Virus record (IMG/VR): IMGVR_UViG_3300042922_001182
Span: 62,001-126,000 of that record
Reading direction: 5' to 3' (one strand)
Length of the DNA stretch: 64,000 bases
Position 1 is the stretch's first letter, and each line of letters begins with the position of its first letter. The notes beneath the pieces are model-generated. The model ran no database searches. It was not told where the DNA came from and worked only from the letters and a program-made list of their open reading frames with translations. Both the position numbers and the translations under genes were made by a program. Below are positions 4,915 to 60,578 of the stretch, one piece after another.

Positions 4915-4926
4915 AACAATCCGATA
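4915..4926 (+). promoter_or_regulatory. AR9-type late promoter AACA-atccga-TA
   Basis: Exact AACA-N6-TA about 30 nt upstream of ATG4957. Confidence 0.65.
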
Positions 4927-4956
4927 TATTCGGAGAGAAATGGAGGCCCGAAGGGA

Positions 4957-6132
4957 ATGGCTTCAAAGGAAGGGGCGAACGCCCTAAAGGAAATAGGGGG
5001 GCCGCTGTCGGCCTCCCTCGCCAACAAGGACAACAGCGCCAGACTGAAGCAGGCGGTTAGGTCGTACGTGGACGCGCACTCCAAGGTGCTCTTGGCGTCC
5101 CACCCGGGTAACCGCCTCTACTTCAGGGAGGCCGACGAGGACGCGCTCTTCAAGGCTGCGGGAGTCAGCCGCGAGGACGTGGACCTGGTCATCAAGAGGT
5201 ACAAGCTGGCCGACAGCACCTGGAGGATCCTCAACAGGGCCTTCTACTGGGCTGGGGCGCTGGCCGTCAGGCACTACCTGGTGTCCAAGGACGAGGAGGG
5301 GGCGCAGCACGCGCTCATCTACCTCGTCCTTCCCATGTACGCGTCTCTCCAGTTCAAGTACTGGAAGCACGAGCCCTCGGGCCACCTGGAGGCCGTGATG
5401 GAGTACACGGTCAACAACCTGAGCAACAAGTTCAAGCTCAAGGAGATGCGGACGATCATCGCCACCCTCCAGTACACCGCCAACTCGACGCTGGAGAAGT
5501 ACAAGGACGGCATCATCAAGGGCGACGACGAGGAGCTCCGCTACTTCCTGTCGCAGCTCTGGATCCGCATCAACGGGTTCCTCCAGAGCGTCGCCAACGA
5601 GTTCTACTCTAACGTGGAGAAGGGCAACCACCTCTACATCGAGAAGGAGCCCGGCGAGGACAGCTTCCGCGAGGTCGACAACGTGTCGATGCTCGTGGCC
5701 AGGCTCTCCGAGTCCAGCTTCAACAGGGCGGTGACCGGCGGCGTGGACACCAGGACGGCCACCGCCGCTTCCACCATCTCCGGGGTCAGCACCTCGGCGA
5801 TCAGGTCGGCGCTGGAGAAGATCAACAGCGAGAAGTCGGCGGAGGTCAAGGAACTGATCACGCTGACCCTCCAGATGTACTTCTCCGACGGCAAGCGGCA
5901 ACCGGACACCGTGGGGACCAACCAGTTCTTGGTGGAGTCCATCAAGAACCTGACCAAGAGCAACACGAAGGAGGAGGCCGTCCTTAGGACAAAGGACATC
6001 CTCGACGACATGCTGCTCACGACGAGCGAGAAGTACAACTCCTCCGAGAGACCGGCCACCAGGGCCAACTTCCGGAAGGCCATCTACATCTACTACGTCA
6101 TTCTGATCCAGCAGACCTACATGGGGAACTAG
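4957..6132 (+). CDS. Jumbo-phage late protein of unknown function (helical)
   Basis: 391-aa ORF with strong codon bias; first gene after a late-type promoter. Confidence 0.75.
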   Translation: MASKEGANALKEIGGPLSASLANKDNSARLKQAVRSYVDAHSKVLLASHPGNRLYFREADEDALFKAAGVSREDVDLVIKRYKLADSTWRILNRAFYWAGALAVRHYLVSKDEEGAQHALIYLVLPMYASLQFKYWKHEPSGHLEAVMEYTVNNLSNKFKLKEMRTIIATLQYTANSTLEKYKDGIIKGDDEELRYFLSQLWIRINGFLQSVANEFYSNVEKGNHLYIEKEPGEDSFREVDNVSMLVARLSESSFNRAVTGGVDTRTATAASTISGVSTSAIRSALEKINSEKSAEVKELITLTLQMYFSDGKRQPDTVGTNQFLVESIKNLTKSNTKEEAVLRTKDILDDMLLTTSEKYNSSERPATRANFRKAIYIYYVILIQQTYMGN

Positions 6133-6146
6133 AAGGAGGTGAGCCC

Positions 6147-6695
6147 GTGGAGCAACAGAGGAAAGTCGGGACGACCCGCTTGGATCGCCTCGAAGAGCTG
6201 ATGGAACTCGACAGGAAGGGCGCTCTGCCGCCCGTCCAGCGGCTCCCTCCCGTCCCCAAGGCCCCCGAGCTGCCGCCCAGCAAGAGGGACCAGGCGAAGG
6301 CGGTGGCCCGCAAGCGGACCGCCCCCGACCCCGTCGCGGGGGTCAAGCGGGCCCCCGTGGCCTCGACCGCGAGGCTCCACGAGCCCCCGAAGGCGCCGAA
6401 GCCGGTCGAGGTACTCAAGGAAGAGATCAAGCAGACACCGGAGCCCCCTCCGCTTGAGGTCAAGCTGAGCAAGCAGCCCCAAGCTGGGGACGAGATCGAG
6501 TTCGTCGCGTCGCCGATGTCCCCCGGGATGCCGTTCCGCATCTACCAGGGAATCATCACCAAGGTGGGCGACGGCGGTCTGGCCAACGTCACGCTGGAGC
6601 ACCCCAGCGGCCCGTGCAGCCTGACAGCGGTGAAGCACCTGGGAGAGGAAACATGGCCCACCTTGCACAGGTGGCGTTTGAAAGAAGGAGACTGA
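6147..6695 (+). CDS. Hypothetical protein (Pro/Lys-rich N-terminus, small beta-rich C-terminal domain)
   Basis: AAGGAGGT RBS, GTG start. Confidence 0.75.
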   Translation: MEQQRKVGTTRLDRLEELMELDRKGALPPVQRLPPVPKAPELPPSKRDQAKAVARKRTAPDPVAGVKRAPVASTARLHEPPKAPKPVEVLKEEIKQTPEPPPLEVKLSKQPQAGDEIEFVASPMSPGMPFRIYQGIITKVGDGGLANVTLEHPSGPCSLTAVKHLGEETWPTLHRWRLKEGD

Positions 6696-6697
6696 TC

Positions 6698-7243
6698 ATG
6701 TTCTTGGAGAACGCACGCCGCATCGACCCTACGGCCTACAAGTACCCGCTCATCATGGAGGCCAGGCCGCTCATCGACCGCCTCCTGGAGAGCGCCGACC
6801 CCACCGCCCAGCTCGTCCTCACCGAGGCCGAGCAGGACAAGGTCGTCGAAGAGGGCAAGAATTGGCTCGAAGAGAGCAAGCGCATGCTGGAGCTGAAGAA
6901 GGCGCAACACGCCACGGCGTCGGACCTGGCCAAGGTGCACGCCCAGTGGACCGCCGGGATCTACATCGTCAGCCTGCTCGTCGGCTTCCTGGGCTTCCCC
7001 CTGGTGCTCGTTACCGGCTACGTCGGCATCCTCCTCTTCGCCGTCATCAGCACCCTGCTGTCGATCGCCTTCTGGATCAACGCTGTCCTTGCGGTCGGAA
7101 ACTTCGCCGCCAGCGTATCGATCAAGAAGCAGATGGAGCAGGAGCTGGACAAGCTGGAGGGCATCCGCAGCCGCTCCTCCGACCGAAAGGTCAAAGAGAA
7201 GATCGATGACCTCATCACCCGCGTCCGTCGAGACATGGACTAG
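6698..7243 (+). CDS. Membrane protein, paralog of 7258..7818
   Basis: AAGGAG RBS; long hydrophobic segment; shares MFL...VLTE.E...W..E...G+YI...K+K..IDD with its neighbour. Confidence 0.75.
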   Translation: MFLENARRIDPTAYKYPLIMEARPLIDRLLESADPTAQLVLTEAEQDKVVEEGKNWLEESKRMLELKKAQHATASDLAKVHAQWTAGIYIVSLLVGFLGFPLVLVTGYVGILLFAVISTLLSIAFWINAVLAVGNFAASVSIKKQMEQELDKLEGIRSRSSDRKVKEKIDDLITRVRRDMD

Positions 7244-7257
7244 GAAAGGAAGAGAAG

Positions 7258-7818
7258 ATGTTCCTCAGCGAGTACCAGAACAGACCCCAAGGTCCCGTCA
7301 GGAGGTCCCTGGCGGACTACCCCACCCTGAGGGAGGCGACCGGTCTGGTAGAGAGGGCCCTACAGGGTGACTTCGACGCCGCCGAGATCGTCCTCACCGA
7401 GGAGGAAAAGGCGAACAGCCTGGCGGAGGCCAAGCGATGGGTCGACGAAGTCCAGGAGTTCGTACGCCAGAAGGACCGCAAGATCCGCAGCGAGTCGGAG
7501 GCCTCCAAGGCCATCGCCTGGATCGGCTCCGGCGTCTACATCTTCGGCCTTCTCATGATGATCGCCGCTCCCCTCAGCCTGGCGATCGGGCTCCTCGGCC
7601 TGCTCGCATCCCTGGTGGGCGTGGTCGTGATGTTCATCAGCGCCGGTAAGGCCGACAACGCCCGCAGGATGTCGATCCAGCTCCGGGAGGAGGGCCGCAA
7701 GCTCCGCCGCATGCGCGACAAGGCCAAGGACCAGAAGCTCAAGGACCAGATCGACGACGTCCTCGACAAGATCGACCAGAACAACGACGAGATCCTGGAC
7801 GCCACCAGGGGAGGTTAA
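7258..7818 (+). CDS. Membrane protein, paralog of 6698..7243
   Basis: Two TM-length hydrophobic helices; shared motifs as above. Confidence 0.75.
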   Translation: MFLSEYQNRPQGPVRRSLADYPTLREATGLVERALQGDFDAAEIVLTEEEKANSLAEAKRWVDEVQEFVRQKDRKIRSESEASKAIAWIGSGVYIFGLLMMIAAPLSLAIGLLGLLASLVGVVVMFISAGKADNARRMSIQLREEGRKLRRMRDKAKDQKLKDQIDDVLDKIDQNNDEILDATRGG

Positions 7819-7820
7819 AC

Positions 7821-8084
7821 GTGAACAGCAAGAGATTCCTCGAACTGGCCGAGGCCGTCGCGCCCGAGAGGGACCGGCAGGTCCTCCTCGAAAGCCGCAC
7901 CCCCTTCGGCACCGGGAGCAAGAGGGAGCTGATGTCCGCCATCGCGACGTTCTCCTCGCTCCCCCTGGAGCACCGGTCCTCCCGCCTCCGGGAGATCGAG
8001 GAGTCCGCCTCGGCCCTCGGCGTGGACCTGGAGAGGTACCACAGCCACCTGTCCATGGAGGTGAACATTGAACGCCAAGCGTAA
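7821..8084 (+). CDS. Hypothetical protein
   Basis: GGAGGT RBS, GTG start, codon bias. Confidence 0.65.
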   Translation: MNSKRFLELAEAVAPERDRQVLLESRTPFGTGSKRELMSAIATFSSLPLEHRSSRLREIEESASALGVDLERYHSHLSMEVNIERQA

Positions 8085-8799
8085 GAAGTACCAGGACCTC
8101 GTCGTCGAGACGATGAAGAGGCTGGACAAGAGCGGCGCCAACGCCAAGAAGTACGCGGAGATGTTCGCCAAGATGGACGACAAGCAGTTCGACTCCTACG
8201 TCAAGGCGTTCGCCAGGGACGAGGACGCGAACTTCTTCATCGAGGTCATCCCGTTCGAGACGGAGCCGACCCTGAAGATGATCGCGGCGACCGCCGAGTG
8301 GCTGGGCGTGCCCCTTGAGGAGTACGTCTTCTTCCGCCACGAGGACCCGGACGGCGACCCCGTGCGGACCTCCGTGAGGGTGCCCGTGGGCTACCTCAAC
8401 CTCAAGCGCCTCCAGCAGATCCTCAGCAAGAAGAACACCATGTCGCTCGACATCGACAAGCGCGACATGCTCGTCAACCAGGTGACCGGCGACGACAAGA
8501 TCGCCCGCATCTCTAACGTCGAGAACTACGCGCTGAGCGTCATGGGGGCCGACGAGGGCCTCAAGGAATTCCTCGGGCCCAGGTCGGACGACGGCCAGAT
8601 GAAGAGGCAGATGTACAGCGACATCTCCACCAAGGGGTACTCGCAGCTCCAGAACCTCTCCAGCAACCCGGAGGACTCGCAGGCCCTCTCCACCGTGGAC
8701 GTCTTCTTCGCGGGAGCGGGGCTCAAGACGGACCTCATCACCAAGGGCATGGCCTTCCCCAGGACCATGCGCAACATGAGCAAGAGAAAGGACGTGTAA
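8068..8799 (+). CDS. RNA polymerase beta subunit C-terminal fragment (probably virion RNAP)
   Basis: VPVGYLNLKRLQQ...ARISNVENYALSVMGA...LKEFLGPRSDD...MY aligns with RpoB VTVGYMYMLKL...RFGEMEVWALEAYGA...LQEMLTVKSDD...MY. The small size and late-operon position fit the virion enzyme. Confidence 0.75.
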   Translation: MNAKRKKYQDLVVETMKRLDKSGANAKKYAEMFAKMDDKQFDSYVKAFARDEDANFFIEVIPFETEPTLKMIAATAEWLGVPLEEYVFFRHEDPDGDPVRTSVRVPVGYLNLKRLQQILSKKNTMSLDIDKRDMLVNQVTGDDKIARISNVENYALSVMGADEGLKEFLGPRSDDGQMKRQMYSDISTKGYSQLQNLSSNPEDSQALSTVDVFFAGAGLKTDLITKGMAFPRTMRNMSKRKDV

Positions 8800-8800
8800 C

Positions 8801-8935
8801 ATGGAAAGCAACGACAAGAAGAAGGACGAGCCCAAGAAGGCCCCCAAGGCCGCCGACGGCCGGGTCCTCATCACCGAGGACGCCACCCTCACGGCGTTCG
8901 GCCTCCAGGACGCCACCACGGCCGCCGTGCAGTAG
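8801..8935 (+). CDS. Small protein, 44 aa (MESNDKKKDEPKK...VLITED...)
   Basis: AAAGGA RBS, GC3 codons; below the ORF-track cutoff. Confidence 0.6.
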   Translation: MESNDKKKDEPKKAPKAADGRVLITEDATLTAFGLQDATTAAVQ

Positions 8936-8948
8936 AGCCGAAGCGAAC

Positions 8949-9001
8949 AAAAAAGACGATCAGCAGCCCCTTACTCCGCCGTTGGAGTAAGGGGCTGCTG
9001 A
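8949..9001. terminator. Perfect 18-bp hairpin with A-run; terminator oriented for the minus strand
   Basis: TCAGCAGCCCCTTACTCC / GGAGTAAGGGGCTGCTGA; A6 at 8949-8954. Confidence 0.65.
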
Positions 9002-9058
9002 CCGGTTAAGACGGAAAGAGAGAAAGAAAGAACGCTCCGAGTGGCTCTCGCAGCATAC

Positions 9059-9070
9059 CATTGTAGTGTT
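9059..9070 (-). promoter_or_regulatory. Late-type promoter AACA-ctacaa-TG facing the 8960-9001 hairpin
   Basis: Reverse-complement match to AACA-N6-TG. Confidence 0.45.
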
Positions 9071-9187: not shown

Positions 9188-9199
9188 AACATTGGATTG
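9188..9199 (+). promoter_or_regulatory. Late-type promoter AACA-ttggat-TG
   Basis: Motif match, but in an AT-rich island where chance matches are more likely. Confidence 0.35.
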
Positions 9200-9306: not shown

Positions 9307-10254
9307 TTGCCTGAGATCACCACCATGTACAACACCTACGCCGCGAGCATCATCAAGTTCCGGCGGAAGCTGGAGCAGATATCGACGAGGCTCGACCAGG
9401 CCATGGATGTCGAGATCAACAAGAGCGTCTTCGAAACCCCGCTGACCGATAGGGCGAAGGAGGTATGTCTAGCCTTTGGCGAAGAAATCAAGGAGACCCT
9501 ATCTCACTACTTCGCCGCCTACCTGGCCCAGGGGGCCAGCCCTTACGTCTACATTTCCTACAACACCTCTACATGCGGGACAAGGATCGTCCTCCCCGAG
9601 TGGTTCCACTCCTTCGAGAACCTGGTGTTCAACAAGGACAAGGGCCTCTGGATGGTGGACGTGAACTGCTTCCCGAAGCCCTTCTTCCTGTCTTCCACCC
9701 GTAAGGACATCCTGGGAATGGGCATCAAGGAGCTGCACGCGCCCCACGCCTTCCAGGAGAATCACAGGGTCTTCACTACCTACGAGGAAGCCTTGAGCTT
9801 CAGTCGGAAGCTAACCGAACAGGCCCTGAAGGATACGGGGAAGGTCATCTGCGACCTCCGGCAGCACGCCTACGTGCTGAGCCTGCTCAGCCCCCTCCGG
9901 ACCTTCAACGAGGCCGAGGTCCTGGTCGATAGGCAGCGGAAACTAAACGAGAAAATCCGGGGCAAACAAGGTCATGTGTGGTTCGTCGACGACAACGGCG
10001 CAGTGTGCGCTGCGTCCTGCAGCCACGTCTCCGTCAACAGGCGCAAGGGCCTGGGTAAGCTCTACTCCTACCGGGTGAATGGCCTGGGCTGGGTGGACGC
10101 CTCCAAGCTCTACTGCGAACAGCACGAGGCTATGCAGGACTTGGTCGGAAGGAAGGCCAAGGAGCTCGAACACCTGGAGATGCAGATCGCTCTCCGGAAG
10201 AGGGAGCTCGACAGCACCAACCCCCCGGACAACGGGTCCCCCGCCGGATCCTAG
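9307..10254 (+). CDS. Hypothetical protein
   Basis: GGGAGG RBS, TTG start, 315-aa ORF. Confidence 0.7.
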   Translation: MPEITTMYNTYAASIIKFRRKLEQISTRLDQAMDVEINKSVFETPLTDRAKEVCLAFGEEIKETLSHYFAAYLAQGASPYVYISYNTSTCGTRIVLPEWFHSFENLVFNKDKGLWMVDVNCFPKPFFLSSTRKDILGMGIKELHAPHAFQENHRVFTTYEEALSFSRKLTEQALKDTGKVICDLRQHAYVLSLLSPLRTFNEAEVLVDRQRKLNEKIRGKQGHVWFVDDNGAVCAASCSHVSVNRRKGLGKLYSYRVNGLGWVDASKLYCEQHEAMQDLVGRKAKELEHLEMQIALRKRELDSTNPPDNGSPAGS

Positions 10255-11563: not shown

Positions 11564-11573
11564 CACATATTAT
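11564..11573 (+). promoter_or_regulatory. Early-type motif CACATATTAT
   Basis: Exact copy of 16793 and 35905. Confidence 0.55.
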
Positions 11574-11652: not shown

Positions 11653-13590
11653 TTGCACGACAGGATCGACATCGAGGCCTACCGCAACACCGACCGCTTC
11701 CTTGGGGAGGAGGTCCTCTTCCCCTTCGTGAGGAGCACCGACGGCTCGCGAGAGCTGATGGCCTCGTCCCAGGTCCACCAGGCGCTCGTCCTGACCAACG
11801 GTGAGTTCCCCCGCGTCTTCACCGGGTACGAGAACCAGGTGGGGAAGTACAGCTCCGCCTACCTCCGCGCCGAGCAGGAGCTCAAGATTCTCGAAGTCAT
11901 CGGGAAGAACCCGTACAACGCGCTCATCGTCTACGAGGACGAGGAGGGGACCATCGGCGTCATCTGGCGGAAGGAGTGCGAGAGCCTCTCCGAGCACTTC
12001 GGCTACCAGTACGACAACACCTACTTGGACGGGAAGTGGGAGGGCGACACGATCGCCAAGGGGGACGTCATCCGGCGGGGGACCGCCTACGACGAGGAGA
12101 TGAACTTCTCCTTCGGAACCAACCTCAGGGCGGTCTACATCCCCTGGGACGGAATGACCTTCGAGGACGCTATCGTCATCAGCGAGAGCACGTCCAAGAA
12201 GCTTGAGACCTCCTTGGTGGAGGTCGTCACGATCAACATGAACACCAACGACCTGGCCCTCAACCTCTACGGGGACGAGGATCCCAGCGGCTACAAGTCG
12301 TTCCCCGACATCGGCGAGGAGGTCAAGAACGGCATCCTCATGGCCCGTCGCCGCATCAACTACGAGTCCGCCCTTGTGGACCTGAGCACCAACCTCCTGA
12401 CCCAGGTCAACCCCAGTCGGGACACGGTGTTCTACTGCAACGGCACCGTGGTGGACATCGAGATCTTCAACAACGACGACGTCAACCGCCTGGAGAAGTA
12501 CGACTACAACGCCCAGATGCTCAAGTACCTGGCCGTGAACATGGAGTTCTACCGCGACGTGGACAGGGTCCTCGGCGCGTACATCAACGGCGGTCGCTCC
12601 TACACGGAGGACGCCGCCGCCGCCTACCGCCGCGCCCGGGACATCTGCAAGGATGGCGAGGAGCGCATCCGCTGGCGGCAGAACAAGAACGACTTCGAGT
12701 CCTACGTCATCCGGTTCACCCTGCTGCACAAGACCACGGCCAAGCCCGGGTCGAAGCTGGCGAACCGCTACGGCGGCAAGGGCGTCATCTCGCTCATCCT
12801 CCCCGACGACCAGATGCCGGTCAACGAGCACGGCGAGCGGGCCGAGATCATCCTCAGCCCTCTTGGCGTCACCAACCGCCTCAACCCGTCCCAGCTGATC
12901 GAGCAGGAGCTCAACTTCGTGGCGGACCACATCATGCGGGAGGCCAGGAAGGCGCCCGACACCATGACGGCGTGGGGTCTAATCCAGGACCTGCTCATCC
13001 AGGTCAGCCCCACCCAGGCGTCGGCCATGGCCAGCCACCTGTACAAGGAGGACATGGAGAGCTTCGTCAAGTCCATCCTGGACGACAAGCTCTACATCCA
13101 CCAGGCGCCGTTCTGGGGGAACCTGGACCTCGGCGGCCTGATCGAGCTGTACACCAAATACCCGTGGATCAAGCCCTACAAGATGAGCTGCTCCGAGAAG
13201 CCGCTGATCATGGGCGACATCTACTTCATGCTCCTGAAGCACGAGCCGATGACGAAGTTCTCGGTTCGCTCCACCAGCACCGTGAGCAACCGTGGCACCC
13301 CCTCCAAGAGCAGCCGCTACAAGGAGCACCAGCAGCCGTTCAGCCACACGCCGATCAAGATCGGCGAGATGGAGACCTTCAACATGTTCGCCACCGGCAA
13401 CTTCGAGGAGGTCCTCCGCATGCTCAACCTCTACTCCTCCAACCCGGGGGACAGAGAGCACCTCGCAAATGTTCTCCTCAAGACGAACATCTTCGACAGC
13501 AAGCAGGTAGATTCGCTCGGCGGCGAATCCAGCGTCAAGTCTATCATGGACGTACTGCTCACCAGCGCCGGTCTCCGGCTTACCGATTAG
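11653..13590 (+). CDS. RNA polymerase beta subunit, C-terminal half (probably non-virion RNAP)
   Basis: DGSRELMASSQVHQA, GMTFEDAIVISE, GSKLANRYGGKGVIS, IILSPLGVTNRLNPSQL, IKIGEME. The TTG11653 start is preferred (AAGGAAGG RBS) because ATG11572 lies inside the promoter motif. Confidence 0.9.
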   Translation: MHDRIDIEAYRNTDRFLGEEVLFPFVRSTDGSRELMASSQVHQALVLTNGEFPRVFTGYENQVGKYSSAYLRAEQELKILEVIGKNPYNALIVYEDEEGTIGVIWRKECESLSEHFGYQYDNTYLDGKWEGDTIAKGDVIRRGTAYDEEMNFSFGTNLRAVYIPWDGMTFEDAIVISESTSKKLETSLVEVVTINMNTNDLALNLYGDEDPSGYKSFPDIGEEVKNGILMARRRINYESALVDLSTNLLTQVNPSRDTVFYCNGTVVDIEIFNNDDVNRLEKYDYNAQMLKYLAVNMEFYRDVDRVLGAYINGGRSYTEDAAAAYRRARDICKDGEERIRWRQNKNDFESYVIRFTLLHKTTAKPGSKLANRYGGKGVISLILPDDQMPVNEHGERAEIILSPLGVTNRLNPSQLIEQELNFVADHIMREARKAPDTMTAWGLIQDLLIQVSPTQASAMASHLYKEDMESFVKSILDDKLYIHQAPFWGNLDLGGLIELYTKYPWIKPYKMSCSEKPLIMGDIYFMLLKHEPMTKFSVRSTSTVSNRGTPSKSSRYKEHQQPFSHTPIKIGEMETFNMFATGNFEEVLRMLNLYSSNPGDREHLANVLLKTNIFDSKQVDSLGGESSVKSIMDVLLTSAGLRLTD

Positions 13591-20662: not shown

Positions 20663-20674
20663 AACAAACCCCTA
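20663..20674 (+). promoter_or_regulatory. Late-type promoter AACA-aacccc-TA
   Basis: Exact motif about 30 nt before ATG20706. Confidence 0.55.
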
Positions 20675-21557: not shown

Positions 21558-21571
21558 AACATCGAATTGTT
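21558..21571. promoter_or_regulatory. Quasi-palindrome matching AACA-N6-TG on both strands
   Basis: CAACATCGAATTGTTG; the minus copy points to HU and the plus copy towards RNAP beta-N. Confidence 0.5.
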
Positions 21572-21806: not shown

Positions 21807-23225
21807 ATGAAGAAATTCCTGAGCGAATTCTCTCCCGGTGAGCCCTTCAACGAGGAGTTCATCTTCGCCAAGGACAACGACGACGTGCTTGCCTACGTGG
21901 ACGACGTGGCGGCCACCCTCAACGTGATCGAGGGCGTCGAATACCTGGGGAGCGAGCTGATCGCCGACGAGACGGAGCTACGGCCCCGTCAGGAGGACGG
22001 CAAGCAGTGGATGAGCCTCGACGAGAGCCGCCTCGACATCATTAGGATGCAGTGGCGTATCACGAAGGGGGAGGAAACCGAGGTGATCACCCAGGAGGTG
22101 CTCTACCCCAAGCTCATCGACCACCACTACTACCTGATCAACGGGGTGAAGTGCTACCCCATCTACCAGATCGTGGACTCGGAGTGCTTCAAGACCTCCA
22201 GGTCGGTGACGCTCAAGACGATGGTCATGCCCATCATCCTGCGCCACGAGCCGGAGGAGTTCGAGGACATGGAGGGGAACGTCTACAACGCCCACTCCTA
22301 CAAGCTCCACCTGTTCCACTACAAGATCAACTACCTGCTCTACTACCTCTCCAAGAAGGGGTTCGAGCAGACCATCGAGTACATGGGCTGGGACGCCTAC
22401 CACCTGGGGCTGCTGGACGCCGAAGAGGCGAGCGGCATCGACCAGGAGGTCTACCGCCTGTTCAAGGTCTCCGGGACCAGCGTGCTGTACGCCTCCAAGG
22501 AGATGCTGCAGGACCGCAACGGGCTCGACATGGTGGCGTCGCTGCTGGACGTGCTGGAGGGCAAGACCCGCCCCGAGAAGGCGGCGGAGATCGAGTACTG
22601 GAAGCGCAAGCTCGGCTCGGTGTTCACCAAGAACACCGTCAACTACGTCGAGAAGGCCGAGAGCATCAGCATCTCCTTCGAGCGCATCATCGGAAGCCGC
22701 GAGCACAAGGTGCTCCGGATCGACGACGAGGACAAGAAGGACACCTACAGCGTCGTGCGCTGGATGGTGAGGAACTACGAGGAGCTGCACCGCCAGGACA
22801 ACATGGACCTGCGCCACAAGCGCATCCGCCTGCACGAGTACCAGCTCTACCCGCTCCTGACTAAGCTGTCGACCGGCCTGTACCGGGCCCTCAACACCAA
22901 GGACCCCAAGTTCAACGACCTGAAGCAGATCCTGCGCGTCGGCCCCGGCCACGTCATCAAGCGCCTGCTCAACAACGACCTGCTGCGGTACAGCAGCGCC
23001 GTCAACGGCATGGACCTCTTCAACAGCGCGTTGAAGTTCTCCTTCCGTGGCCCGCAATCGCTGGCCGACGGCGGTAAGACGATCTCGACCAAGTACCGGG
23101 GCATCCACCCCAGCTACATCGGTCGGATCGCGCTCAACACCAGCTCGAACGGCGACCCCGGCATGGGTGGCACGTTCTGCCCGTTCATCCAGCCCCACGG
23201 CCAGTACTTCACCAAGGAGAGATAA
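21807..23225 (+). CDS. RNA polymerase beta subunit, N-terminal half (probably non-virion RNAP)
   Basis: YPKL....YYLINGVK..PIYQI, DNMDLRHKRIR..E, and KFSFRGP...YRGIHPSYIGRI....SSNGDPG match RpoB (R.VHPTHYGR.CP..TPEG...G). Confidence 0.88.
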   Translation: MKKFLSEFSPGEPFNEEFIFAKDNDDVLAYVDDVAATLNVIEGVEYLGSELIADETELRPRQEDGKQWMSLDESRLDIIRMQWRITKGEETEVITQEVLYPKLIDHHYYLINGVKCYPIYQIVDSECFKTSRSVTLKTMVMPIILRHEPEEFEDMEGNVYNAHSYKLHLFHYKINYLLYYLSKKGFEQTIEYMGWDAYHLGLLDAEEASGIDQEVYRLFKVSGTSVLYASKEMLQDRNGLDMVASLLDVLEGKTRPEKAAEIEYWKRKLGSVFTKNTVNYVEKAESISISFERIIGSREHKVLRIDDEDKKDTYSVVRWMVRNYEELHRQDNMDLRHKRIRLHEYQLYPLLTKLSTGLYRALNTKDPKFNDLKQILRVGPGHVIKRLLNNDLLRYSSAVNGMDLFNSALKFSFRGPQSLADGGKTISTKYRGIHPSYIGRIALNTSSNGDPGMGGTFCPFIQPHGQYFTKER

Positions 23226-25854: not shown

Positions 25855-25866
25855 TATACTATTGTT
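25855..25866 (-). promoter_or_regulatory. Late promoter AACA-atagta-TA
   Basis: Exact motif about 35 nt upstream of the protease. Confidence 0.65.
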
Positions 25867-26381: not shown

Positions 26382-26442
26382 ATTAGGGGGACGCGGGCCC
26401 TCAACACCCACTTGTACGACACCCACACGCTAGGAGAGGACA

Positions 26443-30268: not shown

Positions 30269-30280
30269 AACACCATGATA
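30269..30280 (+). promoter_or_regulatory. Late-type promoter AACA-ccatga-TA upstream of the tRNA
   Basis: Exact motif. Confidence 0.55.
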
Positions 30281-42266: not shown

Positions 42267-42278
42267 AACACGACCGTA
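42267..42278 (+). promoter_or_regulatory. Late-type promoter AACA-cgaccg-TA
   Basis: Exact motif inside a G/C-rich inverted repeat. Confidence 0.45.
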
Positions 42279-51096: not shown

Positions 51097-51108
51097 AACA
51101 CCCCGCTA
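51097..51108 (+). promoter_or_regulatory. Late-type promoter AACA-ccccgc-TA
   Basis: Exact motif after hairpin 51042-51070. Confidence 0.5.
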
Positions 51109-52075: not shown

Positions 52076-52084
52076 GGGGACGAC

Positions 52085-52195
52085 GTGACCGCCTACGACT
52101 GGACCCTGGTCGGCGCCCTGGCCGCCGTGGTGCTCCCCCTCCCCCTGGGCCTGCTGGCCCTCGGGCTCACCCCCACAGAGAGGAAGACGAAGTGA
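52085..52195 (+). CDS. Small membrane peptide, 36 aa
   Basis: AGGGGG RBS, GTG start, TM helix. Confidence 0.45.
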   Translation: MTAYDWTLVGALAAVVLPLPLGLLALGLTPTERKTK

Positions 52196-53073: not shown

Positions 53074-53084
53074 AGAGAAGAGAC

Positions 53085-54243: not shown

Positions 54244-54461
54244 CGATTGCACCACGCTATGGTGAGGCTCCCCAACCGGGAGGAGATGCGGCTCCTGGAG
54301 GAGTACACCGGCCTCAAGAGCATCCTGATCAGGGTGGGGGACTTCGCGTCCTGCGGGGTCGTGATGGCCCTATGGGAGCTGGCCCGCATGTGGCTGGGCT
54401 AGAGCCGATTCGGTGGGAAGGGGCCTCGCGGCTCCTTCCCGCCTCCCTCTTACCACGGTAG

Positions 54462-54473
54462 AACAACCACATA
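54462..54473 (+). promoter_or_regulatory. Late promoter AACA-accaca-TA
   Basis: Exact motif about 45 nt upstream of the portal gene. Confidence 0.65.
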
Positions 54474-56887: not shown

Positions 56888-56902
56888 CGAGAAGAGAACG
56901 CA

Positions 56903-56941
56903 AAGACCCGAACCCCATGTGGGGTTCGGGTCTTCTCGTTT
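56903..56941. terminator. Bidirectional terminator between portal and tube genes
   Basis: AAGACCCGAACCCC/GGGGTTCGGGTCTT. Confidence 0.7.
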
Positions 56942-56948
56942 GCTAGCT

Positions 56949-57677
56949 CTAGCGGGTGCTCTTCGAGTTCGGGGTGTAGTCGCCCATGGCGCGGAAGCCG
57001 AACATGGTCGACTTCAGGACCTTCTTGGCGAGGTCTTCCACGGCCTGCGAGGTGTGGAAGTTGCCCTTGAACGGGATGTCGATCTCGACCTGACCGTGGT
57101 CGCCCTTGGAGTAGTTGTGCTGCGCCAGGGCGATCTTGGTCGGGAACACGGACGTGTAGATCGCCGCGAACTCGATGTTGTCGTTGTCGACGTTGTGGGC
57201 GTCGGGACGGGTCTGGATGTAGAGCAGCTCGCCGGTGTGGTGGCGGGCGCCGTACTGGCCGTCGTTGACGTTCACGTAGGTCGCCAGGCCGGTCTCGGGG
57301 TCACGGATGCCGCTGGCCCAGTACTGGAACAGCGAGCGCACCGGCGAGCCGGAGAACTCCTGGAACTTGATCTGGAACTCGGTGTTACCCTTGGTCACAC
57401 CGGCCGCCACCTGGTACTCCTGGGCCGCGAAGCCCGAGGTGACCGCCTCGGTGGTCAGGTCGATGTCCGAGATACCGTCGAAGCCCTGCATGTTGGCCTC
57501 GGTGAACTCCATGGCCTTGGGGAACTTCTTCAGCACCCAGCTAGGCAGCTTGAGCCAGCGGAAGTACGCATAGCCCTTGATCATGGGGTCGTTCGTCATG
57601 TCCTTCCCGGCGAGGTCGAGTGCGCCGAGGAAGGAAGACGGACTCTCGTACTCATTGAAGTTGAATCCGGTCGTCAT
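56949..57677 (-). CDS. Tail tube protein
   Basis: Directly downstream of the sheath; 242 aa; beta-rich E.SGSP....YW..GI.DP and FPT motifs. Confidence 0.7.
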   Translation of the reverse strand: MTTGFNFNEYESPSSFLGALDLAGKDMTNDPMIKGYAYFRWLKLPSWVLKKFPKAMEFTEANMQGFDGISDIDLTTEAVTSGFAAQEYQVAAGVTKGNTEFQIKFQEFSGSPVRSLFQYWASGIRDPETGLATYVNVNDGQYGARHHTGELLYIQTRPDAHNVDNDNIEFAAIYTSVFPTKIALAQHNYSKGDHGQVEIDIPFKGNFHTSQAVEDLAKKVLKSTMFGFRAMGDYTPNSKSTR

Positions 57678-57771
57678 TACTCTCCTCTTTTCTTTTACAG
57701 AAGTGAAGGTGCTCTATTAGGCTCGGTTGAGGCGCCCGACCCCGAGGGGCCGGGCTCCATGGTTTGTTCGC

Positions 57772-60483
57772 TTACTTGACGATGATGTCGTTGACGACAC
57801 GCTCGATCACGTTGTTGAAGACCAGCTCGGTCTTAACACGCGTCACCTTGCGCTTCTTCTCGTAGTCGGAAGCGTACACCGTGCCATTGGCAACCTTGCA
57901 GGCGCGGTTGTCGACCCACTGGGAGAGCTCGCCGTTCACATCCGCCTGGAAGGCGTTGTAGGTCGAGGCGTCGCTGAACTCGAACTGGTAGTTCTCGCCC
58001 ATGCGCTCGATACGGCGGAGGATCCTCAGGAGGACGCGGACGTTGTTCTGGTCCGACAGGGCGGAGACCACCTTCTGCATGGTCAGCTGGGAGCCGATCT
58101 TGGTGGTGGTGTTGTCCTGCTCGGCGTAGTTGATCTGGAGCTTGTACAGCTCCTCCTTCCACGTCTCGGTCGGGTTGAACGACATGCGCTTGAAGCCGTC
58201 GAGGACGCCGCGACGCAGGCCAGCCAGCGGGAACTGGATGCCGTTGGCGGTGTCGTTGGCGGGGATCATGCGCGACAGGAAGTAGGTCATGGTGACCTTG
58301 ATGTCGCCGCCGGTGAACTCCGCGTCCTCGACCACGAAGTCCTGGGTGTAGAGCGAGCCGAAGAAGCTCGACGCCTGCGCCTGGTTCTTGCGGAAGTCGA
58401 CGGCCTTCGCCGCGTTGGGCGTAAAGCCGGTGTCCAGGATCGCCATGTGGTCGCCACGGATGTTCCGGGCCAGCTCCAGCATGGCGGTCTTGACGGGCGT
58501 GGGGTAGTTGGCGTCGATCGTCAGGTCGATCGGGACCAGCTTCTTGTTGGTGACGTTCTGGTCGAGCGTGCCGCTGTACGCGGACACCAGCAGCGAGGTC
58601 GCCGTGGTGGTGCGCAGAGTGGGGTTCGACTCGTCCAGGTCGCCGTCGGTACCGCTACCGAGAGGCGCGAGGTTGTCGATGTTGTAGATGTCGACGCCGT
58701 AGGTGTTGCCGAGCTTGACCGTGGCCTCCGAGCGCGCCTCGGTGAGGACGCCAGCGGCGGCGGTCAGGACGGCGACCTTGTCGGCATCGGACGCCTTCGC
58801 GACGCCGACGGCGGCGGTCAGGACGGTGTCCAGGTGACCGTAGGCCGTCTCCATCGAGGTGATGACGTCGTTGGCAGCATCGACCTTGGCCTCGGTGAGG
58901 TTGGTGTTGATGGCGGCCTGGGCGGCGGTCAGGGCAGCAGCGGCGGCGGAGGTCGCCGTGTTGAGCTTGTTCGCAGCGGACGAGGTCGTCGCGATGGCGT
59001 ACGCAGCCAGGGCCGCATCGGCCGCCGTGATGGCGGTGTCCAGGGTGGTCTCGGTCGCGTCCGCCTCGGTCGAGATAGCCAGCACGGTGGTGCGGACTTC
59101 CTTGGCCAGGGCGACCGCGTCCTTGGCGGCCTGGTGACGGGTCACCGGGTCGGCGCCGACGTTGGCGGCGGTGATGGCAGCCTGGGACGCGGTGACCCGC
59201 GAGGTCAGGCCCAGGGTGGCCATCTCCACGACGTTGGCGGTGCGCGAGGCGGTGGTGTAGCCCTCGATCGCCACCAGAGCCGCGAGGACGGCGACGGTGG
59301 CACCCTGGACGGCGCGGCCCAGGTTGTAGGCCTGAAGCTGCTCGGTGCGCTTGGCGCCCGAAGCGTAGGCCAGGAGGGCCTCGGCAGCGAGCTTCTCGGC
59401 AGCTTCGCCGACGGCGGCGACCATGTCGGCCTTCAGCTTGAGGAAGGTGCCAGCGGTGGTGGGATCGCCCTTCGACGTGGTCAGGGCGGTCTTCAGCGCG
59501 GTGGCCTCGGTGTTGTAGGTACCGGCCTCGACCTTGTCCATCGCGTCTTCGATCGTCGCGATGGCGGTCAGGGCAGCGGCGTGGTCGGACACGCGCACGG
59601 CCTCGTCGGCGTTCACGATCGCGGCGACGGTGGAGCTGGAGACGTCGGCGAGCTTGGTGCCAGCGTGGATGGGATCCTCGCCGTCGACGTCGCGCTCGGT
59701 GACGGTCAGCAGGTCCAGCAGGGCCGGGTCGACGTCCGGGTTGATCGCAGCGCCGAGAGCGTTGTAGGCGTCCTCGTTGTAGAGGAACTCCATCTGCTCG
59801 GAGAAGTTCTCGAACACGTAGTCGATCGTCATCTTCTCGTTCGACTTCGACTTGGCGTCGGGCGAGAACGAGACGAGGAAGGGGCCCTCGACCGGGGTGA
59901 CGGTGCCGGTCTTGGAGACGCGGACAACGCTGGCCTCGTAGACGCGGAAGTCGTTGGTGTTGTCCAGGTCCGTGGTCAGACGGAGCTGCACACCCAGGTC
60001 GTTGTAGCCCTTGCCGCGACCCTTCGGGCGGAACGCGCCCAGCAGGTGGTGCTTGTAGCCGTCCACGGTGTCCGAGTGGACGCGCTTCAGCTCGGCTTCG
60101 AGCGCCTCGTGCGAGGTGTGGTTCACCGGGCTGTACATCAGCACCGGGCGGACCTGCAGCTTGCCGCTCTCCATCTTCGTCTGGACGTCCAGGATGACGT
60201 GAGCGAAACCGGCGTTCTCGGGCATGACGCGGAGGCCGAAGACCTCGCCGCCGGACTGCAGGAAGTTGCGAATGTTGTACATGGCCTGTCCGTGGCGGCG
60301 CATGTTGGGCTTGCCGTAGTGAAACTCGGCCTCGCTGGGGGTGGTAAGCCTGACCAGCGTGTTGTCGGGACCGATGTCCGACGTGAACGCGGTAAGCATC
60401 ACGGTCGACCCCGCCGCAGTCACGAAGATCACCGAGTCGTCGATGATCCGCGAGCTGATACTCGGGTGAAGATACTCTTCCAT
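57772..60483 (-). CDS. Contractile tail sheath protein with Ala/Thr-rich insertion
   Basis: YLHPSISSRIID, GP.N, YG.PN, LRVMPENA; C-terminal DANYP..VK, R.D..AILD, P.AG..RG, LYKLQINY, SALS..NNVRVL; GGAGG RBS before ATG60483. Confidence 0.85.
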   Translation of the reverse strand: MEEYLHPSISSRIIDDSVIFVTAAGSTVMLTAFTSDIGPDNTLVRLTTPSEAEFHYGKPNMRRHGQAMYNIRNFLQSGGEVFGLRVMPENAGFAHVILDVQTKMESGKLQVRPVLMYSPVNHTSHEALEAELKRVHSDTVDGYKHHLLGAFRPKGRGKGYNDLGVQLRLTTDLDNTNDFRVYEASVVRVSKTGTVTPVEGPFLVSFSPDAKSKSNEKMTIDYVFENFSEQMEFLYNEDAYNALGAAINPDVDPALLDLLTVTERDVDGEDPIHAGTKLADVSSSTVAAIVNADEAVRVSDHAAALTAIATIEDAMDKVEAGTYNTEATALKTALTTSKGDPTTAGTFLKLKADMVAAVGEAAEKLAAEALLAYASGAKRTEQLQAYNLGRAVQGATVAVLAALVAIEGYTTASRTANVVEMATLGLTSRVTASQAAITAANVGADPVTRHQAAKDAVALAKEVRTTVLAISTEADATETTLDTAITAADAALAAYAIATTSSAANKLNTATSAAAAALTAAQAAINTNLTEAKVDAANDVITSMETAYGHLDTVLTAAVGVAKASDADKVAVLTAAAGVLTEARSEATVKLGNTYGVDIYNIDNLAPLGSGTDGDLDESNPTLRTTTATSLLVSAYSGTLDQNVTNKKLVPIDLTIDANYPTPVKTAMLELARNIRGDHMAILDTGFTPNAAKAVDFRKNQAQASSFFGSLYTQDFVVEDAEFTGGDIKVTMTYFLSRMIPANDTANGIQFPLAGLRRGVLDGFKRMSFNPTETWKEELYKLQINYAEQDNTTTKIGSQLTMQKVVSALSDQNNVRVLLRILRRIERMGENYQFEFSDASTYNAFQADVNGELSQWVDNRACKVANGTVYASDYEKKRKVTRVKTELVFNNVIERVVNDIIVK

Positions 60484-60566
60484 CCTTTTTTCCTCCACTT
60501 CTGTTAGACGGGTCGCCTAAGGATTCAATCGAGCCATCTCATTGTGAGACCCATGGGAGCACTCTT

Positions 60567-60578
60567 TAATTGAATGTT
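60567..60578 (-). promoter_or_regulatory. Late promoter AACA-ttcaat-TA
   Basis: Exact motif upstream of the sheath gene. Confidence 0.65.

What the first reader, a model, noticed from the sequence alone, without database searches (positions are those of the whole stretch)
4915..60578. AR9-type late promoter AACA-N6-T(A/G) at 12 intergenic loci in a high-GC genome
Seen: exact matches at 4915(+), 9059(-), 9188(+), 20663(+), 21558(+)/21560(-), 25855(-), 30269(+), 31774(-), 42267(+), 51097(+), 54462(+) and 60567(-). They sit, correctly oriented, before the portal, protease, sheath, HU, tRNA and the virion-RNAP operon. Known: this is the consensus recognised by the Bacillus phage AR9 non-virion RNAP, which requires template-strand deoxyuridines. 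Inference: the promoter code is conserved in a distant GC-rich relative. It also marks the unknown genes at 4957, 20706, 31733, 42322 and 51129 as late genes.
Basis: partly seen in the sequence, partly recalled or inferred. Interest (0 to 1): 0.7.

Follow-up and report, generated by a model that had tools for sequence, protein, structure and literature searches.

The report
AR9-type late promoters in GC-rich phage
A giant soil-metagenome phage with 63.5% G+C marks its structural-gene operons with the same short promoter (AACA, six bases, TA) that the unrelated-looking, AT-rich Bacillus phage AR9 uses for its own second RNA polymerase, so the promoter code is conserved across a whole phage clade and can here be read straight from the sequence.

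Summary
All 13 listed matches exist. The signal lies in the intergenic AACA-N6-TA class. Genome-wide (238,984 bp, DTR-bounded IMG/VR virus), 38 of 52 copies lie in the 6.5% of DNA that is non-coding, against 3.9-4.3 expected. Other spacers give 2-8 copies, and any substitution in AACA or TA abolishes the excess. All 20 copies between co-directional genes point with those genes, at a median 41 nt before the start codon. The window holds 9 copies against 1.0 expected.

The phage is a distant, syntenic AR9 relative. It encodes all four non-virion RNAP core subunits and a gp226 (promoter-specificity) homologue that keeps the U-selective valine. AR9 orthologues, and orthologues in three metagenomic relatives (48-66% GC), carry the motif at similar distances. 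The AR9 early promoter core (ATATTAT-N6-G) is conserved too.

Caveats:
- The TG variants are weaker. 21558(+) mirrors 21560(-), and 9059(-) precedes no ORF.
- "Late" may mean "continuously expressed" for 20706 and 51129.
- No TSS data were available, and dU-DNA is inferred only (a dTMP-phosphatase homologue is present; no ThyA, ThyX or dUTPase).

Verdict: a new member of a known kind.

The parts
4915..4926 (+). Late-type promoter AACAATCCGATA. Predicted TSS is A4926, 31 nt before gene 4957-6132. It heads the tightly packed operon 4957-8935, which includes the virion-RNAP subunit gene 8068-8799.
   Evidence: The AR9 orthologue of 4957-6132 carries AACATTTTATTA 28 nt upstream, and the G001 and G002 orthologues carry the motif at 22 and 38 nt. 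8068-8799 matches PHROG 3233 'RNA polymerase beta subunit' (E 7.5e-46) and is 52% identical to the AR9 virion RNAP subunit BI022_gp077.
20663..20674 (+). Late-type promoter AACAAACCCCTA, 32 nt before the unknown gene 20706-21125. There is no terminator between it and the upstream early operon, so the gene may be expressed continuously.
21560..21571 (-). TG-variant late-type promoter AACAATTCGATG, 43 nt before the HU-like gene 21215-21517. The plus-strand match at 21558-21569 is its mirror image (AACA-N6-TGTT) and is probably not a separate promoter.
   Evidence: AR9 HU has AACAAATTTATA 84 nt upstream. An early-type motif at 21652 serves the plus-strand gene instead.
25855..25866 (-). Late-type promoter AACAATAGTATA, 36 nt before the head maturation protease gene 24998-25819 and the virion-protein homologue 24296-24994.
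26403..26414 (+). TG-variant late-type motif AACACCCACTTG, 29 nt before 26443-26934 and the SbcC-like gene 26945-29662.
30269..30280 (+). Late-type promoter AACACCATGATA, 42 nt before tRNA-Arg(CCT) at 30322-30396.
   Evidence: AR9's single tRNA is also a late gene (PMC5312081).
31774..31785 (-). Late-type promoter AACACTATCATA, 41 nt before the unknown gene 31008-31733.
42267..42278 (+). Late-type promoter AACACGACCGTA, 44 nt before a three-gene unit 42322-44322 that ends at a hairpin plus T-run at 44330-44349.
51097..51108 (+). Late-type promoter AACACCCCGCTA, 21 nt before 51129-51305 and the run of genes up to 54402. It is internal to a long plus-strand gene series.
54462..54473 (+). Late-type promoter AACAACCACATA, 45 nt before the portal-like virion gene 54518-56887.
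   Evidence: The AR9 orthologue has AACATTTAATTA 29 nt upstream. A 31%-GC relative (L004-L007) has AACAATTCAATA about 34 nt upstream.
60567..60578 (-). Late-type promoter AACATTCAATTA, 84 nt before the tail sheath gene 57772-60483 and 56949-57677. The unit ends at the hairpin 56902-56935.
   Evidence: The motif sits before the sheath orthologue in AR9 (34 nt), G001 (55 nt) and G002 (66 nt).
9188..9199 (+). TG-variant motif AACATTGGATTG, 108 nt before 9307-10254 and the UvsX-like gene 10279-11484. It is a possible but unconfirmed promoter.
   Evidence: AR9 UvsX has AACAAGTAATTG 35 nt upstream.
9059..9070 (-). TG-variant motif AACACTACAATG with no minus-strand ORF downstream. On the minus strand it is followed by a 20-bp hairpin (9004-8957) and a U-tract, so it is either a chance match or the promoter of a small RNA of about 110 nt.
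11653..13590 (+). Homologue of the non-virion RNAP beta C-terminal subunit (42% identical to AR9 BI022_gp088). It is preceded by an early-type promoter at 11567-11573.
21807..23225 (+). Homologue of the non-virion RNAP beta N-terminal subunit (40% identical to AR9 BI022_gp104). The pocket residue equivalent to AR9 R363 is conserved. It is preceded by an early-type variant motif at 21652-21658.
11567..11573 (+). Early-type (virion RNAP) promoter core ATATTAT, within gCACATATTAT-N6-G. Other exact copies in the window are at 1465, 16796 and 35908. One-mismatch copies are at 21652, 25903 and 31801.
   Evidence: The AR9 early consensus is AAATATATATTAT-N6-G (PMC5312081).

Best explanation
AACA-N6-TA, with a minority of AACA-N6-TG, is the promoter read by this phage's own non-virion multisubunit RNA polymerase. 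That enzyme consists of four split beta/beta' subunits plus a gp226-like specificity subunit.

By homology with AR9, the holoenzyme binds the template-strand complement (3'-TTGT/UUGT-5' at -11 to -8) in pockets formed by the gp226 '2.1bis' helix and the beta-N subunit. Transcription starts at the final A or G. The polymerase subunits are themselves made from early promoters (cACATATTAT-N6-G) read by the virion-packaged polymerase. The AACA promoters then switch on virion, virion-RNAP, tRNA and some other genes later in infection.

Shown here: motif enrichment, exact spacing, orientation, position, the presence of all polymerase parts, and conservation of the motif before orthologous genes in five genomes of 28-66% GC.

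Inferred:
- the TSS position;
- the timing;
- recognition requiring deoxyuridine, which would imply a dU-DNA genome. I put that last step at about 0.6.
For: Statistics:
- 38 intergenic copies against about 4 expected.
- Only the N6 spacer is enriched, and only AACA and T-A/G are tolerated.
- 20 of 20 copies between co-directional genes are on the gene strand, none lie in convergent gaps, and the median distance to the start codon is 41 nt.

Machinery:
- A gp226 homologue (E 3e-50; sole PDB hit 7S01_A, E 5.8e-46) whose helix YSDKVLWAYLKNM aligns with AR9 YSDVVIWTYLKNM. V206 and Y210 are therefore kept.
- The beta-N residue equivalent to AR9 R363 is kept.
- Homologues of all four nvRNAP core subunits and four vRNAP subunits are present, with 71 AR9 homologues in syntenic order.
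- In the cultured-phage collection, gp226 homologues occur only in the AR9/PBS1, phiR1-37, LPJP1 and S6-like group.

Comparative:
- 19 of 24 motif-bearing genes have the motif within 150 nt upstream of their AR9 orthologue, against 18 of 47 for the other genes (P = 0.0013), often at near-identical distances.
- The motif is also found before the sheath, TMP, vRNAP beta'N, baseplate and other orthologues in G001 (65.6% GC) and G002 (48% GC).
- The N6 spacer peak and the strand bias are seen in all four relatives: G001 23 same-strand and 0 opposite, G002 35 and 5.

Gene classes:
- The motif precedes portal-like, sheath, MCP, protease, TMP and vRNAP genes.
- Early-type motifs precede nvRNAP and replication genes.

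dU:
- A homologue (31% identical, E 1e-32, DxDxV motif) of AR9 BI022_gp150, which is the characterised PBS1 dTMP phosphatase Dtm.
- No ThyA, ThyX or dUTPase.
Against: - There are no transcript data. No RNA run holding this sequence was listed, so the TSS and the timing are untested.
- The motif carries only about 12 bits. A few intergenic copies are expected by chance (about 4 TA and about 5 TG), so individual sites, especially TG ones, can be false.
- For the dU step: no dCTP/dCMP deaminase (Dcd) and no Ugi homologue were found.
- AR9 beta-N K375 aligns with Asp in a gapped region.
- gp226 F261 and Y263 are replaced by S and F, although in AR9 these make main-chain contacts.
- Some motif-bearing genes are not structural, for example the DNA polymerase part at genome 141017-142252.
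Confidence: 0.87

Rival explanations
1. The promoter and the polymerase are as described, but the phage has ordinary thymine DNA. Its gp226-like subunit would then read 3'-TTGT-5' rather than 3'-UUGT-5'. The AR9 promoter code would be conserved without the uracil requirement.
For: - No dCTP/dCMP deaminase, no Ugi homologue and no dUTPase-family protein were found.
- AR9 K375 is not conserved in the pairwise alignment.
- The genome was recovered from an ordinary soil metagenome.
- A single V206G change suffices to relax U-specificity in AR9, so specificity is evolutionarily labile (PMC9209446).
Against: - The valine itself is conserved here, and the position is V, I or T in most of the metagenomic family.
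- A homologue of the PBS1/AR9 dTMP phosphatase, an enzyme whose known role is to exclude thymidine, is present here and in G001 and G002.
- There is no thymidylate synthase of either type.
- In the cultured collection, the closest gp226-encoding phages (AR9/PBS1, phiR1-37, S6) are reported dU-DNA phages (PMC9209446, PMC12697855).
- A host dCTP deaminase could supply dUTP.
Confidence: 0.33
2. The motif is a promoter, but for a different enzyme: host RNAP with a host or phage-encoded sigma-like factor, or the virion RNAP.
For: It lies upstream of genes and is oriented with them, which any promoter class would show. One site (4901-4930) also scores as a weak sigma-70-like match.
Against: - An AACA box only 6 nt from the start dinucleotide does not fit -35/-10 geometry.
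- Sigma-70-like matches are at chance level: 4 against 2.1, 3 against 2.0 and 1 against 1.3.
- A separate motif, ATATTAT-N6-G, identical in core and geometry to the AR9 vRNAP promoter, already accounts for the virion enzyme.
- The AR9 nvRNAP holoenzyme has been shown in vitro to use exactly this consensus (PMC5449584 and PMC9209446).
Confidence: 0.04
3. The motif acts at the RNA level, as a processing or 5'-UTR signal, rather than as a DNA promoter.
For: It is strand-specific and lies 20-95 nt before start codons, which a 5'-UTR element would also show.
Against: - It heads units that begin just after terminator hairpins and occurs in divergent gaps, where no upstream transcript would exist.
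- There is no conserved secondary structure around it (mean z = -0.4).
- In AR9 the homologous sites are primary transcript starts and work in vitro.
Confidence: 0.03
4. It is a chance or compositional artefact of AT-richer intergenic DNA.
For: The pattern is short and degenerate. Intergenic DNA is AT-richer (55.7% GC) than the genome as a whole. Most TG matches in the window are codon-driven.
Against: - There is a tenfold excess over shuffles of the intergenic DNA itself.
- The spacer is exactly 6 nt and every fixed base is intolerant to change.
- Strand bias is perfect.
- The motif is conserved before orthologues in five genomes.
Confidence: 0.01

Closest known systems
Bacillus phage AR9 (PBS1 group) late promoters read by the non-virion RNAP holoenzyme with gp226
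   Same: - The consensus AACA-N6-T-A/G is identical, with the same exact spacing.
- The position before virion genes, the tRNA and the vRNAP genes is the same.
- The five-subunit enzyme set is the same, including a gp226 homologue with the conserved 2.1bis helix (V206, Y210).
- The companion early promoter core ATATTAT-N6-G is the same.
- Gene order is syntenic.

   Different: - 63.5% against 27.8% GC.
- Proteins are only 25-50% identical.
- There are far fewer copies (about 40-50 against 118 mapped in AR9), with a stronger preference for +1 A (39 A to 11 G).
- Upstream of ATATTAT, the early motif reads CAC instead of TAT.
- No Dcd and no Ugi homologue were found.
- The host is unknown (soil metagenome).
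- Nothing has been tested experimentally.
phiKZ-type non-virion RNAP late promoters (TATG, with gp68 as fifth subunit)
   Same: It is a split multisubunit nvRNAP with a fifth, sigma-like subunit that is distantly homologous to gp226. The promoter element is very short and overlaps the TSS, with T at -1 and a purine at +1.
   Different: - There is no upstream AACA box in phiKZ.
- TATG is not enriched here: 81 observed against 87.6 expected in intergenic DNA.
- The gp226 homologue finds no phiKZ-like phage in the cultured collection.
- phiKZ has thymine DNA.
Bacterial sigma-70 -10 element recognition
   Same: A short element about 10 nt upstream of the TSS is read in single-stranded form by a sigma2-like domain through base-specific pockets (PMC9209446).
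   Different: In AR9 the template strand is read, not the non-template strand. There is no -35 element and the consensus differs. Sigma-70-like matches are at chance level in this window.
Predicted promoters of Staphylococcus jumbo phages (MarsHill group) and phiR1-37
   Same: They belong to the same gp226-encoding clade, and their AR9-like early motif TATATTAT can be found by motif search.
   Different: In those AT-rich genomes the late motif could not be found de novo. Here the high G+C content makes it stand out without transcript data.

Membership tests
AR9-type nvRNAP late promoter | Consensus 5'-AACA-N6-T-(A/G)-3' with every fixed base required | tested here: met
   38 intergenic TA copies against 3.9 expected, and 12 TG copies against 4.9. 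Every other single substitution gives 1-7 copies, except GA with 11.
AR9-type nvRNAP late promoter | Exact 6-nt spacer between AACA and the start dinucleotide | tested here: met
   N6 gives 38 copies; N0-N5 and N7-N12 give 2-8. The same peak appears in G001, G002, G003 and AR9.
AR9-type nvRNAP late promoter | Upstream of, and co-oriented with, late (virion, lysis, vRNAP, tRNA) genes | tested here: met
   20 of 20 are co-oriented, none lie in convergent gaps, and the median distance is 41 nt. They sit before portal-like, sheath, MCP, protease, TMP, vRNAP subunit and tRNA genes.
AR9-type nvRNAP late promoter | Genome encodes a gp226-type specificity subunit | tested here: met
   Genome 189471-190922; 28% identity over residues 6-445 of 464; E 3e-50. 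The only PDB hit is 7S01_A.
AR9-type nvRNAP late promoter | Genome encodes the four split beta/beta' nvRNAP core subunits | tested here: met
   Homologues of AR9 BI022_gp269, gp088, gp104 and gp153, at 36-42% identity.
AR9-type nvRNAP late promoter | Transcription starts at the final A/G of the motif | not testable with these tools
   No RNA run holding the sequence was listed. Only one DNA soil-metagenome run holds it.
AR9-type nvRNAP late promoter | Recognition of the template strand with obligatory dU at -11 and -10 | not testable with these tools
   Indirect evidence only. The valine that excludes the thymine methyl group (AR9 V206) and Y210 are conserved, and beta-N R363 is conserved. K375 is not aligned with a Lys.
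dU-DNA phage (PBS1/AR9-like) | Thymidine-nucleotide-depleting enzyme (Dtm or Dtt) | tested here: met
   Genome 137991-138689(-) is 31% identical (E 1e-32) to AR9 BI022_gp150. The termini of that AR9 protein match the primers used to clone Dtm_PBS1. The DxDxV motif is kept, and there is a sub-threshold NT5C hit.
dU-DNA phage (PBS1/AR9-like) | Phage dCTP deaminase (Dcd) supplying dUTP | tested here: not met
   No PF00383 or PF22769 match, and no tblastn hit to the AR9 Dcd. Among the relatives, only G002 has one.
dU-DNA phage (PBS1/AR9-like) | Uracil-DNA glycosylase inhibitor | tested here: inconclusive
   There is no tblastn hit to AR9 Ugi. Ugi is small, fast-evolving and host-specific, so its absence says little.
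dU-DNA phage (PBS1/AR9-like) | No thymidylate synthase and no dUTPase | tested here: met
   PF00303, PF02511 and PF00692 are absent from a DTR-bounded genome rated 100% complete.
dU-DNA phage (PBS1/AR9-like) | dU replaces dT in virion DNA | not testable with these tools
   This requires nucleoside analysis of the DNA.
AR9-type vRNAP early promoter | AT-rich box ATATTAT followed by N6 and a G start | tested here: met
   21 of 21 ATATTAT copies are intergenic. 18 of 21 have G at the 13th base after the first A. 12 of 12 co-directional copies are on the gene strand. The AR9 consensus is AAATATATATTAT-N6-G.
phiKZ-type late promoter | TATG at the TSS, enriched before late genes | tested here: not met
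   Intergenic TATG: 81 observed against 87.6 expected.

The most novel reading that the evidence does not exclude
A clade of uncultivated AR9-like jumbo phages spans about 24-66% G+C. All of them keep the template-strand AACA-N6-T-purine promoter code and a Dtm-type dTMP phosphatase.

The GC-rich soil members (this genome and G001) would be the first high-GC dU-DNA phages. They would make dU-DNA without a dCTP deaminase of their own, presumably by using the host's. The preferred start base drifts by lineage: A here and in AR9, G in G002, mixed in G001.

In such genomes the complete late regulon can be read from sequence alone.
Probability: 0.5. Interest if true: 0.7.

Novelty: new member of a known kind. 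Interest (0 to 1): 0.55.

Why it matters
The AR9 late promoter is so far an experimentally defined oddity of one AT-rich Bacillus phage. [quoted passage not shown]

Here the same code is read directly from a 63.5%-GC genome. It is also conserved before orthologous genes in five genomes of very different base composition. Three things follow:
- The gp226 recognition mechanism is ancient and clade-wide.
- A ready-made map of early, late and dual-promoter transcription units becomes available for an uncultivated phage.
- Unknown genes (4957, 31008-31733, 42322-44322, 51129-54402) are flagged as candidates for virion or late functions.

It also makes a testable prediction: dU-DNA phages exist for GC-rich soil hosts. 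This bears on restriction and CRISPR evasion, and on whether such phages are under-sampled by library methods that stall on uracil.

Tried and rejected
- **Whole-window enrichment.** The figure is not a fair test. Synonymous-codon shuffling shows that the coding TG hits are noise and that coding DNA shows no avoidance of the motif.
- **Extra conserved flanks.** None were found beyond weak preferences at -7, -5 and -2.
- **Hairpin or cruciform context.** There is no general structure (mean z = -0.4). Only 42267 sits in a hairpin loop.
- **Transcript evidence.** One DNA soil-metagenome run holds the sequence, and no RNA run was listed. Read laying was therefore not used, because assembled contigs of the source sample cannot show TSSs or uracil.
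- **Near-identical cultured phage.** None found.
- **Rfam families in the window.** Only the tRNA was found.
- **Pfam and PHROG annotation of the unknown motif-marked genes.** Only DUF1653 in 42322-42846 and unnamed PHROGs were found. 20706-21125 and 51302-52075 gave nothing.
- **Search for Dcd, dUTPase, ThyA, ThyX and Ugi.** All negative.
- **Sigma-70-type promoters and phiKZ TATG.** Both are at chance level.
- **Structure or complex prediction.** I did not run these for the gp226 homologue. A full-length match to the solved AR9 chain already fixes the homology, and the tools cannot model dU.

Full report
**What the sequence is.** The window is bases 62,001-126,000 of a single 238,984-bp contig. 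The contig is an IMG/VR virus record with direct terminal repeats, is rated 100% complete, and has 63.5% G+C. Only one public run, a soil metagenome that is probably the source, holds it. No RNA run was listed, and no near-identical cultured phage was found. I called genes with a self-trained codon model, which gave 284 genes and 93.5% coding DNA, leaving 15,424 non-coding bases.

The RNAP beta-like ORF at 11653-13590 is most similar (42%) to Bacillus phages AR9 and PBS1, followed by phiR1-37 and the Staphylococcus S6 group. I fetched the whole annotated AR9 genome. A tblastn search found 71 of the 284 proteins to have AR9 homologues, largely in the same order.

**Check of the observation.** The raw window count (47 against 15.3 +/- 4.2) is inflated. 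After synonymous-codon shuffling, coding-sense AACA-N6-TG is at expectation (77 against 72.1 +/- 5.5), so the coding TG matches are codon noise.

The signal is in non-coding DNA and in the TA class.
- Genome-wide, 38 of 52 AACA-N6-TA copies are intergenic, although only 6.5% of the DNA is.
- Expectation is 3.9 from intergenic composition, or 4.3 +/- 2.0 (maximum 12) in 500 shuffles of the intergenic segments.
- Spacers N0-N12 other than N6 give 2-8 copies.
- AACA is the top tetramer of all 256 placed before N6-TA: 38 copies against 19 for the runner-up.
- Every single-base change gives 1-7 copies, except TG (12 against 4.9 expected) and GA (11).
- All 20 copies between co-directional genes are on the gene strand, 18 lie in divergent gaps and none in convergent gaps.
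- 32 of 38 lie within 150 nt of a start codon, median 41.5 nt.
- In the window, the nine TA copies compare with 1.03 expected (P = 1.5e-6), and the five TG copies with 1.36 expected (P = 0.013).
- There is no further conserved flank beyond mild preferences at -7 (A/C), -5 (not G) and -2 (A), and no common secondary structure.

**What lies downstream.** In the window:

| Motif | Downstream genes |
|---|---|
| 54462(+) | portal-like virion protein |
| 60567(-) | tail sheath |
| 25855(-) | head maturation protease |
| 21560(-) | HU-like protein |
| 30269(+) | tRNA-Arg |

These assignments rest.

The motif at 4915(+) heads a gap-free operon, 4957-8935. Its sixth gene, 8068-8799, is a full-length match to PHROG 3233 'RNA polymerase beta subunit' and is 52% identical to the AR9 virion-RNAP subunit BI022_gp077.

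Outside the window, the motif precedes the major capsid protein, the tape measure protein, baseplate genes and the other three virion-RNAP subunit genes.

**The polymerase that should read it.** AR9 late promoters have the consensus A(-11)ACA-N6-T-A/G(+1). They were mapped by dRNA-seq at 94 of 118 late TSSs. They are used in vitro by the five-subunit nvRNAP holoenzyme, whose gp226 subunit confers specificity and reads the template strand 3'-UUGU-5' (PMC5312081, PMC7598289, PMC9209446).

This genome has homologues of the four nvRNAP core subunits: genome 2363-3736, window 11653-13590, window 21807-23225 and genome 145002-146873. It also has a full-length gp226 homologue at genome 189471-190922, with 28% identity and E 3e-50. 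That protein's only hit among solved structures is the AR9 gp226 chain 7S01_A, at E 5.8e-46.

The '2.1bis' helix is nearly identical: YSDKVLWAYLKNM here against YSDVVIWTYLKNM in AR9. This keeps V206, whose side chain excludes the thymine methyl group and whose V206G mutant accepts T, and it keeps Y210, which stacks on G(-9). The beta-N arginine that stacks on U(-10), R363, is also kept. K375 aligns with Asp in a gapped stretch.

Among cultured phages, gp226 homologues are found only in the AR9/PBS1, phiR1-37, LPJP1 and S6-like group.

**Comparative evidence.** Among the 71 AR9 orthologue pairs, 19 of the 24 genes that carry the motif here also carry AACA-N6-T(A/G) within 150 nt upstream in AR9. 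The figure is 18 of 47 for the remaining genes (Fisher P = 0.0013). The distances are often very similar: 31 and 28 nt, 35 and 22, 48 and 53, 31 and 36, 30 and 24.

A protein search found 26 metagenomic gp226 relatives. An IMG/VR scan found 14 loci ranging from 24% to 66% G+C. I fetched three of the records in full: G001 (259 kb, 65.6% GC), G002 (241 kb, 48.4% GC) and G003 (64 kb, 63.1% GC).

| Genome | Intergenic TA copies (N6) | Intergenic TG copies (N6) | Co-directional: same / opposite strand |
|---|---|---|---|
| G001 | 15 | 23 | 23 / 0 |
| G002 | not clearly enriched | 38 | 35 / 5 |
| G003 | 8 | 9 | 7 / 3 |
| AR9 | 82 | 23 | 53 / 10 |

All of them show the same intergenic peak at exactly N6 and the same strand bias. 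The motif sits before the orthologues of sheath, tape measure, vRNAP beta'N, baseplate gp25-like, the DUF7487 endonuclease and others in these genomes.

The preferred start base differs by lineage. It is A here (39 to 11) and in AR9. It is G, in an AACA-N4-ATTG form, in G002.

**The early code is conserved too.** A de novo k-mer scan of upstream regions found a second motif, cACATATTAT. All 21 ATATTAT copies in the genome are intergenic, and 18 of the 21 have G at the 13th base after the first A. A PWM scan adds 12 one-mismatch copies, which are also all intergenic. The AR9 early consensus is AAATATATATTAT-N6-G, with G as the TSS.

In this genome the early motif precedes the genes for nvRNAP beta-C (11567), beta'-C and the operon that holds the gp226 homologue. 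A variant at 21652 precedes beta-N. The logic is the same as in AR9: the virion enzyme makes the second enzyme, which then reads the AACA promoters. Several gaps carry both motif types, as at AR9's 'continuously expressed' genes.

**Site-by-site caveats.**
- 21558(+) and 21560(-) are a single event, because AACA-N6-TGTT matches on both strands. The minus copy serves HU. The plus-strand gene has its own early-type motif.
- 9059(-) has no minus-strand ORF. It is followed on that strand by a 20-bp hairpin and a U-tract, so it is either a chance match or the promoter of a ~110-nt RNA.
- 9188(+) lies 108 nt from its gene.
- 20706 and 51129 follow plus-strand gene runs with no terminator before the motif, so they may be expressed throughout infection.
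- The unit 42322-44322 is bounded by a terminator at 44330.

**Does it need uracil?** This could not be tested.

In favour:
- The valine is conserved.
- There is a homologue (31% identical, E 1e-32, DxDxV motif) of AR9 BI022_gp150. The N- and C-termini of that AR9 protein match the cloning primers of the characterised PBS1 dTMP phosphatase Dtm. The same homologue is also present in G001 and G002.
- ThyA, ThyX and dUTPase are absent.

Against:
- No Dcd and no Ugi homologue were found.

I put dU-DNA at about 0.6.

**Novelty.** In the literature I could search, the late consensus has been mapped only in AR9. It was reported as not found for phiR1-37 and for the MarsHill group, and reviews state that such late promoters cannot be predicted bioinformatically. 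This is therefore a new, GC-rich member of a known promoter-polymerase system. Two additions go beyond the known case: the code is clade-wide, and in GC-rich genomes it is legible from sequence alone.

Noticed in passing
window 1465-1471, 11567-11573, 16796-16802, 35908-35914 (exact); 21652-21658, 25903-25909, 31801-31807 (one mismatch); all + strand: There is a second promoter class, cACATATTAT-N6-G. All 21 genome copies of ATATTAT and all 12 PWM variants are intergenic. It has the same core and geometry as the AR9 virion-RNAP early promoter AAATATATATTAT-N6-G, and it precedes nvRNAP and replication genes.
   Followed up: yes
window 8947-9059, minus strand: A candidate small RNA of about 110 nt runs from the 9059(-) motif to a 20-bp hairpin (9004-8957) plus a U-tract. 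Its fold is a 5' hairpin, an unpaired CU-rich stretch (UUCUUUCUUUCUCUCUUUCC) and a terminator, with MFE -56.7 kcal/mol and z = -7.4. The CU stretch is complementary to the GAGAAAG-type purine words that are enriched before genes. It lies in a 371-nt AT-richer gap.
   Followed up: partly
window 16796-16832: A 15-bp terminator hairpin (16799-16832) overlaps the early promoter at 16796. The predicted early TSS (about 16809) falls inside the hairpin's 5' arm. Upstream transcripts would therefore stop here, while newly started ones would lack the full hairpin.
   Followed up: no
G001 (L031-L043), G002 (L044-L056), G003 (L057-L060): The motif varies by lineage. G002 (48% GC) uses AACA-N4-ATTG with G at +1, and its gp226-type protein has T and L at the V206 and Y210 positions (as in P0010 and P0011). 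G001 (65.6% GC) mixes TA and TG, also shows an excess of CA and GA, and lacks the ATATTAT early box (3 copies).
   Followed up: partly
genome 137991-138689 (-), i.e. beyond the window (L061); G001 163055-163672; G002 46339-46854: A homologue of the PBS1/AR9 dTMP phosphatase (Dtm) is conserved in the GC-rich relatives. The dCTP deaminase (Dcd) is found only in G002. This suggests that dU-DNA synthesis in the GC-rich members relies on a host deaminase.
   Followed up: partly
window 42256-42296: The 42267 promoter lies in the loop of an 11-bp G/C-rich hairpin (GGGGTGGGGGG...CCCCCCTACCCC; -29.5 kcal/mol, z = -3.3). It is the only one of the 38 sites with such a context.
   Followed up: partly
window 21166-21200, 30955-30999, 56902-56935; 32418-32436, 39652-39681, 44330-44349: Long perfect hairpins sit between convergent genes and probably act as bidirectional terminators. 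Plus-strand hairpins with T-runs subdivide the long plus-strand gene runs. Genes 39702-42231 and 44374-51031 start right after such terminators with no recognisable early or late motif, so a third promoter type or read-through is possible.
   Followed up: no
genome 12648(-), 39323(+), 151243(-) (outside the window): A few AACA-N6-TA copies scored as 'coding' sit in the last codons of one gene, 25-45 nt before the next start codon. They are likely real promoters that overlap gene ends. Coding-sense copies are slightly above expectation (9 against 4.5 +/- 2.3).
   Followed up: partly
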